NCBI RefSeq assembly: GCF_003704095.1
Contig: NW_020844984.1
Location: forward strand, 310,001 to 374,000
Source of the DNA: Pocillopora damicornis
Lineage: Eukaryota
Direction: 5' to 3'
DNA: 64,000 nucleotides
Position 1 is the stretch's first letter; the number at the start of each line of letters is the position of its first letter. Both the position numbers and the translations under genes were made by a program. Below the pieces are notes generated by a model. That model was not told the DNA's origin. It made no database searches and saw only the letters and a list, made by a program, of their open reading frames with translations. Below are positions 4,376 to 39,661 of this stretch, piece after piece.

Positions 4376-5365
4376 CTACGCACATTTAATTAAAGTTTTG
4401 ACAGCTTGTCGAAACTCCTTTCGATAAAAACAGTATATTAGGGGATTCATGGATGATTGCAATAAAAGAAAAGTCACAGAAATTTTTCGGAGGATAGGAG
4501 TTACCAATTCTGGATGGTTGAAGAGATAAAAAGCGTAATGAACTGTTCTGGGTAACCAACAGGCTACGAAAATAACAACTATTAAAACACAAGAAAGAGT
4601 TCCTTTTCGTAACTGAAGATACTGCATACGAGTTTGCTTTTTCCACCAGACTCCACAACTGGTGCTGTTGAGCACTGTTACCTTTTGTCTTTGTTTTTTG
4701 ATGGCGATCAAAATTGTTATGTTTATAACGGACACGATTACTATCGGAAGTATGACAAAGACGATGAGTAAGATGTATGAATAAGTTCTGTTGAGCTCCT
4801 CTACAACGTTCTCCGGCCGAGTGTGGGACCAAATGTTCCTGAGCGAGGCGAGAAACAGTGGAGTGAGCCACACAACCGATAAAATCACACGGAGTTTTCT
4901 TCGCGACATTTTGACCTGGTATTTGAGTGGCTGAAAGATGGCCAGATGTCTGTCGTATGAGATGGCAAGTAAATTGAATGTGGACGTGAGGAGGCACACA
5001 TCTTTGCCACCTTCGAAAAACCAACAAAATTTACTCAAGTTGTAAGAGCAACCAGTGCAAAAGGTGGCATAACCAGGCGTTACTATCACGGCCATTGCAG
5101 CGTCGCAAATGGCCAAGCTCAGCAGAAGCAAATTCATGTAGCTCCGCCTGAGGGTTTCGAACCGTAAAAACGTTGCGCAAGTGAGGGAATTTCCCAGCAG
5201 GATAAGAACACCGAATACACTGTTTATGATCCAAAAAGCGAAGTCAAGCTCTCGGCTACAGTCTCCATTAGACTCGAGTTCACCTGAGGGTGGGTTAAAG
5301 TCTGGAAAATGTACCGAATAATGGCTAGAAAACATAGTTGAATTATTTGAAGACACTTGCGACAT
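4376..5365 (-). CDS. Class A (rhodopsin-like) orphan GPCR, cluster member 1, 329 aa, intronless
   Basis: 7 hydrophobic helices; GN (TM1), LAICD (TM2), DRH, W4.50, CWLP, NPLIY, helix 8 FRQA; N-terminal N-glycosylation sequons. Confidence 0.96.
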   Translation of the reverse strand: MSQVSSNNSTMFSSHYSVHFPDFNPPSGELESNGDCSRELDFAFWIINSVFGVLILLGNSLTCATFLRFETLRRSYMNLLLLSLAICDAAMAVIVTPGYATFCTGCSYNLSKFCWFFEGGKDVCLLTSTFNLLAISYDRHLAIFQPLKYQVKMSRRKLRVILSVVWLTPLFLASLRNIWSHTRPENVVEELNRTYSYILLIVFVILPIVIVSVINITILIAIKKQRQKVTVLNSTSCGVWWKKQTRMQYLQLRKGTLSCVLIVVIFVACWLPRTVHYAFYLFNHPELVTPILRKISVTFLLLQSSMNPLIYCFYRKEFRQAVKTLIKCA

Positions 5366-6277
5366 CGCCAGTTATAATATAGCGAAAAAAGAAAAAAATT
5401 AATGCGTCTCCGTCAGCAGGTCAAAAGCAACTAAATGGAAAAAGGACCTTTCGTCGCATTTAACCAAGCAAGCAAGCACAAAATTTAATGCAACGGATAA
5501 GCATGACTTGTTATAGCACTATTAGCTTCATTCAGCTATTCCGGTAGTTGTTTTCAGGCACGCTTAGGACTAAAATTGTAAATAACAGCCGCACAAGGTG
5601 TAGAACAAATTGAACGTTGACGTCATACGCAAAAGCTGTGAGAAATGTTACAGATGTCAAACAAAGAGAGAGCAATAATATGTGACTTTACAATCGCAAT
5701 TTTAATTTTGAAACTTCCGTTGCAGCATTAGAATAAACATCAGAAGAATCACTTAGTTTCCCAAAGCGCTTTGGCTTGCTGAAAGGTGCACGTGTTTGAA
5801 ATGGTATTGAACATGTATAAACACGCGCGAGTCACATGATCACTGAATAGTTCCGCCTACAGAAGAAAAACGTGAATTGACTTCAAGATATATATGTTAT
5901 AATTCGCGCTGAAAGGTTCAGGGAAGCTCGTGGACAGCTATACCCGTTTTGATAACGTAAACGGCGTCATTTAGACTTTGTCGCTTTCCCAATATCTATT
6001 GCATTTAGATGGATCCTGACAGACCTTCTCAGTTCACTGCCAACCAGCCCTTTGGTTAAAATTTCTCTTTTTCAACGACCTCATCGGCTAGAAACGTAGG
6101 CTCGCTGCTATTCATTCCTCATGCATCTCACAAATAACAAATGTCATTAAATTTTCGCGCCCAATTTGAAGTGTTAAACAGCGGAAATTGGAGTAGTGAG
6201 AACCAAGAGTACAGAATTAATGGAAATATTTCGTCTCATTTCAAAGTTAAACAGATACCGATTTTGTAAGTGGCGCT

Positions 6278-6525
6278 GGATTTAAAGGGACTTTAAAAAG
6301 GCATTCTAAGAACTTCAAAATTGCAAATTTAAAGGAACTTGAGAGGGACAATGTAAAGGAGCGAAAAATTGGCGTCAATTCTAAGGGATCTTAAGAGGCT
6401 ACTTTCATGAACTTAAAAGAGGCGAAGGGACTTAGAGTGGCGTATTAAAGAACTTAAGATGGCTATTTTAAAGGTCTTAAACGTGAAAATTTAAGGAACT
6501 CAAAAAGGCGATTTAAAGGAACTCG
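6278..6525. repeat. Degenerate ~22-24 bp minisatellite (consensus ~ATTTAAAGGAACTTAAAAAGGCG)
   Basis: About 10 imperfect copies of the AAAGG(G/A)ACTT core. Confidence 0.55.
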
Positions 6526-7084
6526 CTATATTTACAATGTTGATTTAGATAGGGCGATACAAAAGCCTTCATCAAGTTTAGCGATTTTGCGCTCAGTTAC
6601 AGTTATAGATCCGACTGAACAATACTCAGTATAGGCTTTACCAATTATGGAAAAACAGATAAAGCAACTCTCGTTGTCGCTCGAACACATTTGCTTATTT
6701 TCACGAATCCCCAAAACCTTACCGTTCTGAGAAAATTTAGATCTGTAAAGCAAAAAACCGTCTGCTAGCCGGCGCGTACATTTCAGGAAACTCAGTTGCA
6801 TGTCAAGTATCAACCATTAAGTGGTGAGTTCCAGAAAATTTCTTTTGTCCTTTGCTAATGGCTGATCTTATATCTTGGTTACAGAGATAATCGTAACTGC
6901 CACTTAGTTATCTTTGAAGTTATCAGTGGTTTAGAGGGAAGCATTTTTTACGGCCTATTACCGAAAAAAAAAACTACAAGCTAAAATTTTTACGGAATAA
7001 TATCGCCTTTTCGCACATATCTGACAGACGAAAAGACAAAAACGGACACAATTTCTATATACACTCCTTAAATGAATGATACAA

Positions 7085-37371: not shown

Positions 37372-37375
37372 TTAA

Positions 37376-37575
37376 GGGTATTTGGTATTATCACAAGGCA
37401 ACTGACTTGATAACGTAAATTGGCCACTGTATAGAGTTTCAGCTTTGAAACTCTTTACGGTGGCCAATGTACGTTATCAACTCAATTGCCTTGTGATAAT
37501 ACCAAATTACTCTGTTAAACTCTCTCAACGACGCAGCGCCATAGTTTTGTTTTTGAAACTCACCCCCTTCGTTCT
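37376..37575. mobile_element. Penelope-like fold-back (inverted dimer) repeat
   Basis: TTTGGTATTATCACAAGGCAA..TTGATAACGTA..TGGCCAC..AGAGTTTC / GAAACTCT..GTGGCCA..TACGTTATCAA..TTGCCTTGTGATAATACCAAA. Confidence 0.7.
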
Positions 37576-38671
37576 ATTATGTATTTAAGTTGGAAAAGAC
37601 AATGGAGGTCGCCAAATCTTAAGGATCATGCATTTTTCGAGAGAATATCTCGACTTCAAGCCGTGATGTCACCCAAACAAATAGGCCATTTTAATTATAT
37701 TAATATTCGCCAAGGAATACAAATTTTTCAAATGGCAGATAAAATTGTCAGCAGTGGGTGATACGTTAGTTTGGCTTTTATTTACGTACATTTGCTCACA
37801 AATTGACAGTTCGCGTATGCTGTACGAAGTAGGCAATTTCTACGTCAGCGAATAAAGCAATTATTTTGCGTAAAAGGATTGTCTGAGGATTTTGAACAAA
37901 TCTGAAAACAGATTGAAATGGATTCCTTCTTTCTACTCGGGGGCAACAGTTGCGAAGACAAAGCTTTAACAGAAAATATAACCTGTTTCATCTCCAGAAT
38001 TAAATCTTATTAGGTTGCTGTTATTTATGTCCACATTTTCGAAAGCTTTACCTTCCTTCAAACAAATTACGAATTTCGCTGCGTGTCAATTGATTTAATT
38101 GTCTTTCGAAATTTTTTGAGACAAACACGGATGCAAATATATAAATACACGATCTCTTTCAAAGAATCAGTTCAGGTCAGTTCTAGCTATTTTATTATCA
38201 CTGGCGCTTGATGCTCAAGTGAGATTTTTAATGTTGAAGGATTGATGCATTTTTAAAAGAAGATTTGTTCCGAAAATTGGATATCAAATGAAGGATGACT
38301 ATAGGACTGGACCACCTGGTCAGCATTCTGGCAATAGTCCACTTGCGATTGAATCATTAACAACAAGATTATTCGTCAGTTAAAACTAGGCTTAAATTAT
38401 TAAATGAAATCAAGCTTTGAACAGTCATCGCGTTGTTACTTCTTATTTCAAAACAGGCCTCTTCATTCCTAAAATGATAAAACTTTTAGTCAAGCATTTC
38501 ACAAATTGTATTATTAAAACTGTACACTTTGGAAAAACAGATTATGTCATCGATAGCGTGTATATCAAACGAGACATCTCGTCGCAAAAACATAGCTGTT
38601 GGCCTTTTTCTAATTGCATTATGCATAACAAATGAAATAAAACAGACACTATTGACAACATGAGTTTCCAA

Positions 38672-39661
38672 TCAGAGATAAGAATTATTTTTCTGTTGCT
38701 TTGGGCCGAAATAAAATCTTGTGATAATGTCCCTTGTAGCTTTTCTGAATTGTGCTCTATACACAGTGTAAATAAATGGATTGAAAGACGATTGTATAAA
38801 TAGGAAAATAAAACAAATTCTGAAAAATAAGGGACTTGATAAGAGAGGATCTGGAGAATCCACAATATAGCTAAAATTATGCACAGTTTTTGGCAACCAA
38901 CATATTACAAATGTCATCACAACAATAACACATGATGTTGTTCCCTTTCTTAAACGGGAAATTTCTCTCAGGTCTTTTTTTTGTTGATCTGGTGAATGCA
39001 AAGCACCACAAATCTTAGCAGCTTGTTCGTGTTTGTGAATATTACGAATTATCTGAATGTTAACAGTCACAATTCCAATCTGAAACAGAAGCACTGGGAT
39101 TATAACGACAAATGTGTCATACAACTTGACTTTAAGGTGACGCTGTGCGTTGTCGTCAGTTCTTTGATTCCATGCGTTGCGTGTTGCAGCTACCACGGCG
39201 GGAATCAACCACACGGCTGTTAAAATGACCCCTACTCTAAGTCTTGTCATTTTGGCACCGTATTGCAACGGACGGAGAATGGCGAGAAAACGATCGTAAG
39301 TAATTGCGCAAATGTTGAGCGTGGTTGCCGCCAGTACGAAGTCTCGAGCCTTTCTTAAAAGCCAACAGTAAGAGGTCAGCGAATGAGGACAGTCTCGGAA
39401 ACAGTGAACTGTGTAAAAGGGAATAACAAAAGCAGCCATTAGGATGTCCGAGGCTGACAAGCTTAACAGAAACATATTCATGAAACTATGGCGAAGTTTC
39501 CTGGACGCTAAGAAAACCACGCAGACGAAACTGTTCCCAAAAAACATGACAATCCCTACAACTGCGTAGAGGACCAAAAAAAACGCCTCCTGTGTTTTGT
39601 TGCAGTTATACTCGATGCCGCTCGTAAAAGATTCGCTGCTGTTCTGGTTCAACGAAGCCAT
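38672..39661 (-). CDS. Class A orphan GPCR, cluster member 8, ~329 aa from the first in-frame ATG, intronless
   Basis: 7TM; GN, LSASD, DRF, CWLP, NPFIY, FRKA. The ORF track starts at a GTG (39694); the first in-frame ATG is 39661 (MASLNQNSS). Confidence 0.95.
   Translation of the reverse strand: MASLNQNSSESFTSGIEYNCNKTQEAFFLVLYAVVGIVMFFGNSFVCVVFLASRKLRHSFMNMFLLSLSASDILMAAFVIPFYTVHCFRDCPHSLTSYCWLLRKARDFVLAATTLNICAITYDRFLAILRPLQYGAKMTRLRVGVILTAVWLIPAVVAATRNAWNQRTDDNAQRHLKVKLYDTFVVIIPVLLFQIGIVTVNIQIIRNIHKHEQAAKICGALHSPDQQKKDLREISRLRKGTTSCVIVVMTFVICWLPKTVHNFSYIVDSPDPLLSSPLFFRICFIFLFIQSSFNPFIYTVYRAQFRKATRDIITRFYFGPKQQKNNSYL

What the first reader, a model, noticed from the sequence alone, without database searches (positions are those of the whole stretch)
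4376..39661. Eight-member GPCR family with a basic binding pocket: probably anion-sensing, not aminergic
Counting Ballesteros-Weinstein positions by hand from R3.50, W4.50, P6.50 and P7.50: position 3.32 is K/R in 8/8 (Asp sits at 3.33 in 7/8), 4.60 is R/K in 8/8, 6.51 is R/K in 8/8 (WxPR/K), 7.36 is K/R in 7/8 (His in the other), and 6.55 is N in 7/8. Established: aminergic receptors need Asp3.32, while receptors for carboxylates or phosphates (P2Y, succinate, HCA, FFA, LPA/S1P, prostanoid) use basic TM3/6/7 residues. The scaffold is aminergic/adenosine-like (P2.59, DRY, CWxP), so automated labels would probably say 'adrenergic/histamine/trace-amine-like'. Inference: a lineage-specific receptor array for anionic small molecules such as oxylipins, organic acids, nucleotides or acidic peptides. 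D3.33 may salt-bridge R4.60.
Basis: partly seen in the sequence, partly recalled or inferred. Interest (0 to 1): 0.85.

Follow-up and report, generated by a model that had tools for sequence, protein, structure and literature searches.

The report
Coral receptor family with basic pocket

Summary
The window, from a Pocillopora-type stony coral, holds exactly eight intact single-exon class A GPCR genes. K/R3.32 is present in 8/8, D3.33 in 7/8, R/K4.60 in 8/8, R/K6.51 in 8/8, N6.55 in 7/8 and K/R7.36 in 7/8. The assembly gap is intergenic.

The signature defines the family. It holds in about 100 homologues from stony corals and sea anemones. It is absent from the 38 next-closest paralogues in this genome and from 95 nearest outside representatives.

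The family forms its own clade, apart from a true vertebrate H2 receptor and arthropod adenosine receptors. At least two or three paralogue lineages predate the coral-anemone split. Orthologue dN/dS is 0.14-0.24. One gene is covered by unspliced polyA-RNA contigs in three studies.

Public names (histamine H2, adenosine A2a, alpha-2B, 5-HT2A, muscarinic M4, D2-like) fail the defining residues. The Nematostella members were catalogued but not screened in the large 2024 deorphanisation.

The "anion-sensing" reading stays an inference:
- The pocket also carries conserved acids, giving net +1 to +4.
- The N-termini are acidic.
- K/R3.32 also occurs in peptide receptors such as GnRHR, NTSR1 and CXCR1/2.

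I rate an acid-bearing ligand at about 55%.

The parts
4376..5365 (-). g1: intact 329-aa class A GPCR. K3.32 D3.33 R4.60 R6.51 Y6.55 K7.36.
   Evidence: ORF. Pfam 7tm_1 1.1e-31. Residue table. Groups with Nematostella A7SJS9 at SH-aLRT 97.
7085..8134 (-). g2: intact 349-aa GPCR. R3.32 D3.33 R4.60 R6.51 N6.55 K7.36.
   Evidence: (6.4e-36). An Orbicella orthologue is labelled '5-HT2A-like'.
11493..12452 (+). g3: intact 319-aa GPCR. K3.32 D3.33 R4.60 R6.51 N6.55 K7.36.
   Evidence: (3.3e-33). Sister to the g7 lineage at SH-aLRT 95.
14880..15956 (-). g4: intact 358-aa GPCR. K3.32 D3.33 K4.60 R6.51 N6.55 K7.36. Its pocket has the most acidic residues (5 basic, 4 acidic).
   Evidence: (5.8e-36). Its clade is sister to sea-anemone members (Nematostella A7SJS8, Exaiptasia) at SH-aLRT 99.
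19507..20478 (+). g5: intact 323-aa GPCR and the variant member. K3.32 G3.33 R4.60 R6.51 N6.55 H7.36. Pocket net charge +4. Very short N-terminus.
   Evidence: (7.8e-34).
28278..29327 (-). g6: intact 349-aa GPCR. K3.32 D3.33 R4.60 R6.51 N6.55 R7.36.
   Evidence: (2.1e-35). 86% identical to the Stylophora orthologue labelled 'tyramine receptor Ser-2-like', with dN/dS 0.235.
32414..33382 (+). g7: intact 322-aa GPCR. K3.32 D3.33 R4.60 R6.51 N6.55 K7.36. This is the copy that was modelled and checked for transcription.
   Evidence: (1.7e-38). AlphaFold2 gives pLDDT 83.8 and pTM 0.81. Orthologues are 68-91% identical across stony corals. dN/dS against Stylophora is 0.141.
32227..34676 (+). Extent of the unspliced transcript-like contigs over g7: about 190 nt of 5' UTR, the coding sequence and about 1.3 kb of 3' UTR.
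   Evidence: Colinear contigs of 2.2-2.5 kb occur in four polyA RNA-seq runs of three studies. The flanks 30500-32000 and 34700-35000 are almost uncovered. Contigs cannot give the strand or the exact ends.
38672..39661 (-). g8: intact 329-aa GPCR counted from the first ATG. R3.32 D3.33 R4.60 K6.51 N6.55 R7.36.
Evidence: (9.5e-34).
8896..8995 (.). Assembly gap, intergenic between g2 and g3.
   Evidence: No ORF or GPCR match abuts it.

Best explanation
The eight genes are functional paralogues of an ancient, still orphan clade of class A GPCRs. Named members come only from stony corals and sea anemones. The clade descends from the amine/adenosine-receptor branch but has a charge-reversed ligand pocket.

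What the pocket looks like. Monoamine receptors use Asp3.32 and aromatic 6.51/6.52 to hold a cationic amine. These receptors instead have Lys/Arg3.32 and Arg6.51 deep in the pocket and Arg4.60 and Lys7.36 nearer its mouth. Asp3.33 and Asn6.55 are also conserved. The model predicts ECL2 as a 2-residue turn between extended TM4 and TM5 helices, and the usual TM3-ECL2 disulfide is missing. The mouth should therefore be open.

Most likely mechanism (inferred, not shown). The basic residues act as counter-ions or hydrogen-bond donors for one or more acid groups (carboxylate, phosphate, sulfate or sulfonate) of a small hydrophilic or zwitterionic ligand. Asp3.33 either pairs with Arg4.60 or holds a cationic part of the same ligand. 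The variable pocket positions (3.29, 3.37, 6.52, 6.58, 7.35, 7.39) would tune each paralogue to a different member of that chemical class.

What they are not. They are not histamine, adrenergic, serotonin, dopamine, muscarinic or adenosine receptors, whatever the database labels say.

Confidence by part: real, constrained, orphan family with a reversed pocket and wrong labels, about 0.9; ligand carries an acid group, about 0.55.
For: Shown:
- Eight intact 7tm_1 ORFs.
- A confident 7TM model, pTM 0.81, whose best structural matches are aminergic and adenosine receptors.
- The numbering is anchored on an ungapped alignment to H2R.
- The signature is conserved in about 100 homologues and in 22 (4 of 4 basic) plus 7 (3 of 4) of 31 family representatives. 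Among 95 nearest outsiders, 82 have 0 of 4 and 11 have 1 of 4.
- None of the 38 next-closest paralogues in this genome has the signature.
- Over 28 canonical pocket positions the family has a mean of 4.1 basic residues, against 1.05 in outsiders and 1.37 in own-genome paralogues.
- The anchor positions have low entropy (0.4-1.1 bits), while other pocket positions vary (2.1-3.0 bits).
- The family is split from a true gecko H2R, arthropod adenosine receptors and coral D3.32-type receptors at SH-aLRT 100.
- Sea-anemone sequences fall in three places inside the family, at SH-aLRT 99, 97 and 82.
- Orthologue dN/dS is 0.14 and 0.24.
- polyA-RNA contigs cover g7 but not its flanks.
- 110 of 111 sequences have no Cys in ECL2. 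One Cys in the N-terminus and three in the stretch from ECL1 to C3.25 are conserved in most sequences (94 of 111 each).

Context from papers:
- Cnidarians are reported to lack orthologues of the P2Y and fatty-acid receptor groups (PMC11087051).
- A cnidarian-specific clade next to the monoamine receptors has no known function (PMC10244343).
- The Nematostella members are in the 2024 catalogue, two of them tagged 'MAR', but are absent from the list of receptors tested.

Established knowledge (my own, not tested here): 3.32, 3.33, 4.60, 6.51, 6.55 and 7.36 line the orthosteric pocket in solved class A structures. Acid-ligand receptors use pocket Arg/Lys as counter-ions.
Against: - No ligand was tested, and no coordinates were available to confirm that the basic side chains face the cavity.
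- The pocket is only moderately positive once conserved acids are counted. Net charge is +1 to +4 in the window genes and the mean is +1.7 in family representatives.
- D/E at 1.32 occurs in about three quarters of members and could pair with K7.36. Two members with K1.32 have N7.36.
- N-termini are acidic, mean net charge -2.5. That does not suit a vestibule meant to attract anions.
- A basic residue at 3.32 occurs in receptors for peptides or proteins that are not anions: GnRHR K3.32, NTSR1 R3.32, CXCR1/2 K3.32 (PMC5662886; PMC10425996).
- The basic positions used here are mostly not those used by known acid-ligand receptors.
Confidence: 0.55

Rival explanations
1. They are peptide receptors. 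The basic residues act as hydrogen-bond donors to the backbone or side chains of a neuropeptide, or bind a free C-terminal carboxylate or acidic residues. The wide pocket without an ECL2 lid would admit the peptide.
For: K3.32 in GnRHR and R3.32 in NTSR1 are ligand-related residues in peptide receptors (PMC5662886). The predicted ECL2 is only a tight turn and has no disulfide, so the mouth is open. Cnidarian signalling is richly peptidergic, and these Nematostella members were never screened.
Against: The family sits in the amine/adenosine cluster, not the peptide-receptor cluster. All of the best 60 PDB sequence hits are aminergic, and two Nematostella members are tagged 'MAR' in the 2024 catalogue. 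From my own knowledge, most cnidarian neuropeptides are amidated and N-blocked, so they carry no acid group. The acid partners that accompany K3.32 in GnRHR (D2.61) and CXCR1/2 (E7.39) are absent here: 2.61 is Y/F/H and 7.39 is M/L/F.
Confidence: 0.2
2. The basic residues are mainly structural. They form internal salt bridges (D3.33-R4.60, D/E1.32-K7.36, others with 3.29/5.39/7.35 acids or the acidic N-terminus). The receptor then binds a neutral or cationic ligand, possibly an amine at D3.33, or signals constitutively with the acidic N-terminus acting as a built-in modulator.
For: D3.33 is conserved (96 of 109). Acids are frequent at 3.29, 5.39 and 7.35, and D/E occurs at 1.32 in about 76% of members. 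N-termini are acidic. The co-occurrence of K1.32 with N7.36 hints at a pair. Goulty et al. speculate that the cnidarian-specific clade mediates the responses to monoamines.
Against: Four conserved bases face at most two conserved acids, so a surplus of positive charge remains. g5 has no acid at any of the 28 pocket positions yet keeps three of the four bases (His at 7.36). Members that lack D3.33 keep R4.60 (11 of 12). AlphaFold gives no structure to the N-terminus: pLDDT is below 50 for residues 1-20. From my own knowledge, a cationic amine next to K3.32 and R6.51 would be repelled.
Confidence: 0.2
3. The array is decaying or an artefact: pseudogenes, mis-assembly across the gap, or chance ORFs.
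For: One assembly gap lies inside the span. A broken copy of the family exists elsewhere in the genome.
Against: All eight ORFs are intact with complete motifs. The gap is intergenic. Orthologues are 68-91% identical across coral genera. dN/dS is 0.14-0.24. g7 is transcribed.
Confidence: 0.02

Closest known systems
Bilaterian monoamine receptors (histamine H2, beta1/beta2-adrenergic, dopamine D1/D2/D3, alpha2, TAAR1)
   Same: These are the best sequence matches among solved structures (H2R 4.6e-41; all of the best 60 hits are aminergic). They are also the best fold matches (TM-score normalised to the query 0.70-0.75). They share N1.50, D2.50, P2.59, DRY, W4.50, [CS]WxP, NPxxY and a helix-8 F-R motif.
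   Different: The family has K/R3.32 instead of the amine counter-ion D3.32, and R6.51 with a non-aromatic 6.52 instead of F6.51/F6.52. It has Q7.45 instead of N7.45. There is no ECL2 Cys, so no TM3-ECL2 disulfide, and ECL2 is a short turn. It forms a separate clade from a true H2R at SH-aLRT 100.
Adenosine receptors
   Same: N6.55 is conserved (7/8 in the window; 98 of 103 homologues). ECL1 is Cys-rich and leads into C3.25. A2A and A1 structures are among the best fold matches.
   Different: 7.43 is L/F/Y rather than H. 3.32/3.33 are K-D rather than the hydrophobic pair seen in the arthropod adenosine-receptor representatives. There is no ECL2 to carry the usual Phe/Glu and Cys partners. The family is separated from arthropod adenosine receptors in the tree.
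The 'cnidarian-specific clade' next to monoamine receptors (Goulty et al. 2023) and the 'MAR'-tagged Nematostella GPCRs of Thiel et al. 2024
   Same: This is probably the umbrella group. It consists of orphan cnidarian receptors allied to amine/adenosine receptors. Nematostella members EDO36053 and EDO36056 appear in the Thiel catalogue with the MAR tag.
   Different: Neither paper's held text or files, as far as I searched them, describes this subfamily or its pocket. Goulty et al. speculate that the clade mediates monoamine responses, which the K3.32/R6.51 pocket makes unlikely for this subfamily. I did not test membership in their clade directly.
Class A receptors for acid ligands (P2Y, succinate/oxoglutarate, HCA, FFA, LPA/S1P, prostanoid)
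   Same: Several Arg/Lys residues line the pocket. From my memory, K7.36 is also a phosphate contact in LPA1. This is a likeness in how they work, not in descent.
   Different: There is no detectable kinship: none is among the best 60 PDB hits. From my memory, those families place their bases at 3.28/3.29, 3.36, 5.39, 6.55, 7.35, 7.39 or 7.40. Here those positions are hydrophobic or polar (N6.55, S/N/D5.39); only 3.29 (R in 3 of 8) and 7.35 (R in 1 of 8) are ever basic.
Peptide or protein receptors with a basic 3.32 (GnRHR K3.32, NTSR1 R3.32, CXCR1/2 K3.32)
   Same: A basic residue sits at 3.32 and is involved in agonist action (PMC5662886, PMC10425996).
   Different: Those receptors pair it with D2.61 or E7.39, which are absent here. 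They belong to other class A branches, and none combines it with R4.60, R6.51 and K7.36.

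Membership tests
Class A (rhodopsin-like) GPCR, Pfam PF00001 | 7tm_1 profile match above the curated cut-off, and a seven-helix fold | tested here: met
   All eight score 110.8-133 bits against a cut-off of 30.5. The AF2 model has seven TM helices plus helix 8 and pTM 0.81. There are 500 or more PDB GPCR matches.
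Class A (rhodopsin-like) GPCR, Pfam PF00001 | Microswitch motifs N1.50, D2.50, D/ERY, W4.50, CWxP, NPxxY | tested here: met
   These are invariant or near-invariant in the 8 genes and in 103 homologues. DRY is DRH in g1 and g5 and DRF in g8. C6.47 is S in 3 of 8. P5.50 is present in 6 of 8.
Monoamine (aminergic) receptors | Asp3.32 as counter-ion for the ligand's amine | tested here: not met
   K/R in 8/8 and in 100/101 homologues. In the ungapped alignment it aligns with H2R D98.
Monoamine (aminergic) receptors | Aromatic F6.51/F6.52 cage, and the C3.25-ECL2 disulfide | tested here: not met
   6.51 is R/K and 6.52 is T/Q/I/C/S. 110 of 111 sequences have no Cys in ECL2.
Monoamine (aminergic) receptors | Falls inside the monoamine receptor clade | tested here: not met
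   The family is one side of a split with SH-aLRT 100 against 20 outsiders, which include a gecko H2R and D3.32-type receptors. Caveats: it is a quick tree and few named bilaterian references were available.
Histamine H2 receptor (NCBI name for the Pocillopora and Nematostella members) | D3.32 plus D5.42 and T5.46 for the imidazole (own knowledge of H2R mutagenesis) | tested here: not met
   3.32 is K/R, 5.42 is L/V and 5.46 is F/V/L/P. TM5 numbering was checked on the H2R alignment.
Adenosine receptors (NCBI name for the Stylophora, Montipora and Nematostella members) | N6.55 | tested here: met
   N in 7/8 and in 98/103.
Adenosine receptors (NCBI name for the Stylophora, Montipora and Nematostella members) | H7.43, hydrophobic 3.32/3.33, a long ECL2 with Cys partners, and clade membership | tested here: not met
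   7.43 is L/F/Y, 3.32/3.33 are K-D, and ECL2 is short and without Cys. In the tree the family is separated from three arthropod adenosine-receptor representatives.
Acid-ligand class A receptors (P2Y, SUCNR1/OXGR1, HCA, FFA, LPA/S1P, prostanoid) | Sequence kinship with one of these families | tested here: not met
   None appears among the best 60 PDB sequence hits, which are all aminergic. The nearest library representatives are aminergic-type, adenosine-type or cnidarian orphans.
Acid-ligand class A receptors (P2Y, SUCNR1/OXGR1, HCA, FFA, LPA/S1P, prostanoid) | Basic residues at those families' own anchor positions (3.28/3.29, 3.36, 5.39, 6.55, 7.35, 7.39, 7.40; recalled from memory) | tested here: not met
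   3.28 is F/L/I. 3.29 is R in only 3/8. 3.36 is hydrophobic, 5.39 is S/N/D and 6.55 is N. 7.35 is R in 1/8. 7.39 and 7.40 are hydrophobic, with T at 7.40 in g1. Only 7.36 (K/R in 7/8) coincides, with LPA1.
Acid-ligand class A receptors (P2Y, SUCNR1/OXGR1, HCA, FFA, LPA/S1P, prostanoid) | Activation by an anionic ligand | not testable with these tools
   This needs a cell assay.

The most novel reading that the evidence does not exclude
The family is the anthozoan receptor set for acid-bearing small signals: amino-acid or glutathione-type feeding activators, extracellular nucleotides, or acidic or sulfonated metabolites exchanged with symbionts and microbes. It would then be an independent invention of carboxylate or phosphate sensing. 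It would have arisen inside the amine/adenosine receptor branch by reversing the charge of the 3.32 anchor, in animals reported to lack P2Y-type and fatty-acid-type receptors. If so, it would give a molecular handle on the classical, still receptor-less chemosensory responses of corals and anemones (the link to feeding activators is my own knowledge, not tested).
Probability: 0.2. Interest if true: 0.85.

Novelty: new variant of a known kind. Interest (0 to 1): 0.55.

Why it matters
Whether non-bilaterian animals have monoamine receptors is actively debated, and the cnidarian clade beside the monoamine receptors has no known function. This subfamily shows, by residues conserved since before corals and anemones split, that part of that clade cannot bind amines the canonical way. 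It more likely recognises a different, probably acidic, class of chemicals.

The finding gives three practical things:
- A diagnostic signature: K/R3.32-D3.33, R4.60, WxPR6.51, N6.55, K7.36, Q7.45 and no ECL2 Cys.
- A short list of intact, intronless genes that are easy to clone for deorphanisation.
- A correction to misleading names now spreading through coral and anemone genome annotations and expression studies.

Tried and rejected
- Model coordinates. I looked for them so that I could measure side-chain orientation and pocket electrostatics. None are exposed to scripts, so orientation rests on position equivalence with solved receptors.
- ESM Atlas look-alikes returned only generic class A clusters.
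- Rfam found nothing in the window.
- A literature search for the Nematostella accessions gave no papers. A search for coral GPCRs under the NCBI names gave nothing relevant.
- Taxon of unnamed family members. I tried to learn it through their contigs, but only sample accessions came back, and the Montipora protein was not on record. The known range is therefore stony corals plus sea anemones. Absence from octocorals, medusozoans or bilaterians is not shown.
- Recent local tandem expansion was rejected. The window paralogues are about 40% identical, each has orthologues in other coral genera, and anemone sequences interleave.
- A gap artefact was rejected.
- Extra decayed copies in the window were rejected.
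- D3.33-K7.36 co-variation. The losses coincide in the g5-type group (G3.33 with H/Q7.36), but F/L/I3.33 members keep K7.36. No case can be made.
- Complex prediction was not used, because no candidate protein partner exists.

Full report
**What is there.** The window is G000:C1619:310001-374000 of a 234-Mb, 4393-contig assembly. The encoded proteins are identical or near-identical to Pocillopora proteins and 86-91% identical to Stylophora proteins. The organism is therefore a pocilloporid stony coral.

Between 4376 and 39661 lie eight intact ORFs of 319-358 aa, in the orientation pattern - - + - + - + -. All match Pfam 7tm_1 (E 1e-31 to 2e-38). They are 36-46% identical to each other. tblastn with the eight proteins finds exactly eight loci and no decayed remnants.

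**The gap.** The assembly gap at 8896-8995 lies between the start codon of g2 (8134, minus strand) and that of g3 (11493). It touches no reading frame. Its true length is unknown, so a lost copy inside it cannot be excluded.

**Check of the observation.**
- K/R3.32 in 8/8
- D3.33 in 7/8 (G in g5)
- R/K4.60 in 8/8
- R/K6.51 in 8/8
- N6.55 in 7/8 (Y in g1)
- K/R7.36 in 7/8 (H in g5)
- P2.59, D-R-[YHF], [CS]WxP and NPxxY in 8/8

The count does not depend on my alignment alone. HMMER aligns the family profile to the solved histamine H2 receptor without a gap from C3.25 to DRY. It places the family's Lys on H2R D98 (3.32) and the Asp on 3.33. TM5, TM6 and TM7 are likewise ungapped around the positions used. 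Only the end of TM4 is aligned with a 2-residue shift, so 4.60 is a count along the family's own helix. AlphaFold2 predicts that helix as continuous through residue 169.

**Is it more than shared ancestry of eight copies?** Yes.
- In 103 homologues from the protein database the same residues hold: K/R3.32 100/101, D3.33 89, R/K4.60 102/103, R/K6.51 97/102, N6.55 98, K/R7.36 96/102. Y/F5.38 and Q7.45 are also conserved. Mean column identity of the 98-sequence alignment is only 32%.
- A profile search of 1.84 billion cluster representatives shows a sharp score gap. Full-length family members score about 295-444 bits and the next proteins score 178 bits or less.
- Of 31 family representatives, 22 have all four basic residues and 7 have three. 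Of the 95 nearest outsiders, 82 have none and 11 have one.
- In the coral's own genome the family consists of the eight window genes, a ninth intact copy (C2496:415582-416532; R3.32 Y3.33 R4.60 R6.51 N6.55 E7.36) and a broken copy 26 kb from it. The next paralogues drop from 345 bits or more to 162 bits or less, and none of the 38 I read has the signature.

**The pocket as a whole.** Over 28 canonical class A pocket positions the family carries a mean of 4.1 basic residues. The nearest outsiders carry 1.05 and the own-genome paralogues 1.37.

The pocket is not purely basic. D3.33 is conserved, and D/E3.29, D5.39 and E7.35 are frequent. Net charge is +1 (g4) to +4 (g5) in the window genes, and the mean is +1.7 in representatives.

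The anchor positions are nearly fixed (entropy 0.4-1.1 bits). Positions 3.29, 3.37, 6.52, 6.58, 7.35 and 7.39 vary between paralogues (2.1-3.0 bits). This is the pattern expected for a shared anchor for one chemical group plus paralogue-specific selectivity. That reading is an inference.

**Fold and extracellular face.**
- AlphaFold2 on the 98-sequence alignment gives a confident 7TM model of g7, with mean pLDDT 83.8 and pTM 0.81.
- Its best PDB matches are beta1-adrenergic, D1, H2, 5-HT1D, A2A/A1 adenosine and TAAR1 receptors. This agrees with the sequence ranking, where all of the best 60 solved hits are aminergic.
- TM4 and TM5 are predicted as extended helices joined by a 2-residue turn.
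- The stretch between 4.60 and 5.38 is only 18 residues, and it lacks Cys in 110 of 111 sequences. The canonical TM3-ECL2 disulfide and the ECL2 lid are therefore missing.
- Instead, most sequences keep one Cys in the N-terminus and three in the stretch from ECL1 to C3.25 (94 of 111 each).
- N-termini are short and acidic, with mean net charge -2.5 (window genes -5, -5, -4, -6, 0, -6, -3, -2). D/E occupies 1.32 in about three quarters of members.
- I could not inspect coordinates. That the basic side chains face the cavity therefore rests on what is established for these positions in solved receptors.

**Age, selection and expression.** In a maximum-likelihood tree of 74 sequences the family is one side of a split with SH-aLRT 100. 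The other side holds 20 outsiders, including a true gecko H2 receptor, three arthropod adenosine receptors, a mollusc D3.32-type receptor and coral paralogues.

Inside the family each window gene groups with orthologues from other corals. Sea-anemone sequences fall in three separate places:
- sister to the g4 lineage (SH-aLRT 99)
- with the g1 lineage (SH-aLRT 97)
- sister to the g2 lineage (SH-aLRT 82)

At least two, and probably three, lineages therefore predate the coral-anemone split. The array is old, not a recent burst.

Nematostella also keeps four members as near neighbours. They have consecutive gene models on one scaffold, and a 7tm_1 gene lies 7 kb from A7SJS9. Stylophora keeps the divergent g6/g7 pair 3.3 kb apart, as in the window.

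dN/dS against Stylophora is 0.235 for g6 and 0.141 for g7.

For g7, colinear contigs of 2.2-2.5 kb (window 32227-34676) occur in four polyA RNA-seq runs from three studies, while the flanks are almost uncovered. This fits an unspliced mRNA with about 190 nt of 5' UTR and 1.3 kb of 3' UTR. Contigs cannot give the strand or the exact ends. The other seven genes were not checked.

**What is known.** Public names for members are 'histamine H2 receptor' (Pocillopora, Nematostella), 'adenosine receptor A2a(-like)' (Nematostella, Stylophora, Montipora), 'alpha-2B adrenergic receptor-like' and '5-HT2A-like' (Orbicella), 'tyramine receptor Ser-2-like' (Stylophora), 'muscarinic M4' (Nematostella) and 'D2 dopamine receptor A-like' (Exaiptasia). 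The defining residues of those families are not met, as the membership table sets out.

Goulty et al. 2023 describe a large cnidarian-specific clade next to the monoamine receptors. Its role is 'yet to be determined', and they speculate that it mediates monoamine responses (PMC10244343).

Thiel et al. 2024 report that cnidarian sequences form their own subclusters in the small-transmitter cluster, and that P2Y and fatty-acid receptors are bilaterian-specific (PMC11087051). Their catalogue contains the Nematostella members. EDO36053 is GPR169_MAR, EDO36056 is GPR182_MAR, and EDO36054 is listed untagged. None of the family's TM6 motifs or these identifiers occurs in the file of the 161 tested receptors, which does hold protein sequences.

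No paper in the library cites the Nematostella accessions. The family is therefore orphan and, as far as I can find, undescribed as such.

**Interpretation.** The firm part is that this is a real, constrained, expressed receptor family whose pocket has lost the amine counter-ion and gained a conserved basic tetrad. It is not a monoamine or adenosine receptor in the usual sense (about 0.9).

The inferred part is that the tetrad binds acid groups of the ligand (about 0.55). In favour:
- There is a surplus of conserved positive charge at positions that contact ligands in solved receptors.
- The anchor-plus-variable pattern fits a shared chemical group.
- The mouth is open and polar.
- Other known acid-ligand receptor families are reported absent in cnidarians.

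Against:
- Conserved acids lie in and around the pocket, and they could pair with the bases.
- The N-termini are acidic.
- Basic residues at 3.32 work in peptide or protein receptors: GnRHR, where K3.32 mutation lowers agonist binding; NTSR1 R3.32; and CXCR1/2, with a K3.32-E7.39 bridge (PMC5662886; PMC10425996). Their acid partners at 2.61 and 7.39 are absent here.

A zwitterionic ligand would use both D3.33 and the bases, and I consider that sub-case attractive. Examples are an amino acid, glutathione or a betaine-like or sulfonated metabolite. The link to the classical amino-acid and glutathione feeding responses of cnidarians is my own knowledge and is untested.

**Verdict.** This is a new variant of a known kind: a charge-reversed offshoot of the amine/adenosine receptor branch. 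It is worth a deorphanisation effort, but the ligand class is still a hypothesis.

Noticed in passing
G000:C2576:96495-97463, C2282:276916-277845, C1274:194858-195772, C1274:140189-141133 (loci L005, L020, L026, L029): Four other coral paralogues carry a canonical aminergic-type pocket (W3.28, D3.32, F6.51, F6.52, N7.45). Two of them group loosely (SH-aLRT 86) with a gecko H2 receptor and other D3.32-type receptors. This bears on the debate over whether monoamine receptors are a bilaterian innovation.
   Followed up: partly
G000:C2496:415582-416532 and C2496:442333-443113 (L001, L002): A second locus of the family lies outside the window. It has an intact ninth copy with a variant pocket (R3.32, Y3.33, R4.60, R6.51, N6.55, E7.36). 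A copy broken by several stop codons lies 26 kb away.
   Followed up: partly
window 35340-35500: A short interspersed repeat with at least 1010 candidate copies at about 90% identity in this genome. It has very high depth in polyA RNA contigs. A second repeat-like spike lies at 34174-34507, inside the g7 3' UTR.
   Followed up: partly
window 34-1440 (+) and 44151-44951 (+): Two long ORFs flank the array. One is a 468-aa low-complexity open frame at the window's start. The other is a 266-aa protein with a signal-peptide-like start and a Ser/Arg-rich stretch, which another first-stage note calls prion/Shadoo-like. Neither matches any Pfam family.
   Followed up: partly
window 52546-53523: Further runs of N are interleaved with a short tandem-like repeat, which produces spurious long ORFs.
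   Followed up: no
family alignment, positions 1.32 and 7.36: D/E at 1.32 is conserved in about 76% of members. The two sequences with K at 1.32 have N at 7.36. This may be a TM1-TM7 charge pair that would take K7.36 out of ligand binding.
   Followed up: partly
proteins P0171 and P0174 (unnamed ENA/Logan contigs): A divergent branch of the family with long third loops has G2.50 in place of D2.50. It also has H/Y6.51, K6.55 and N7.36. Its neighbour gene is another 7tm_1 gene. The organism is unknown.
   Followed up: no
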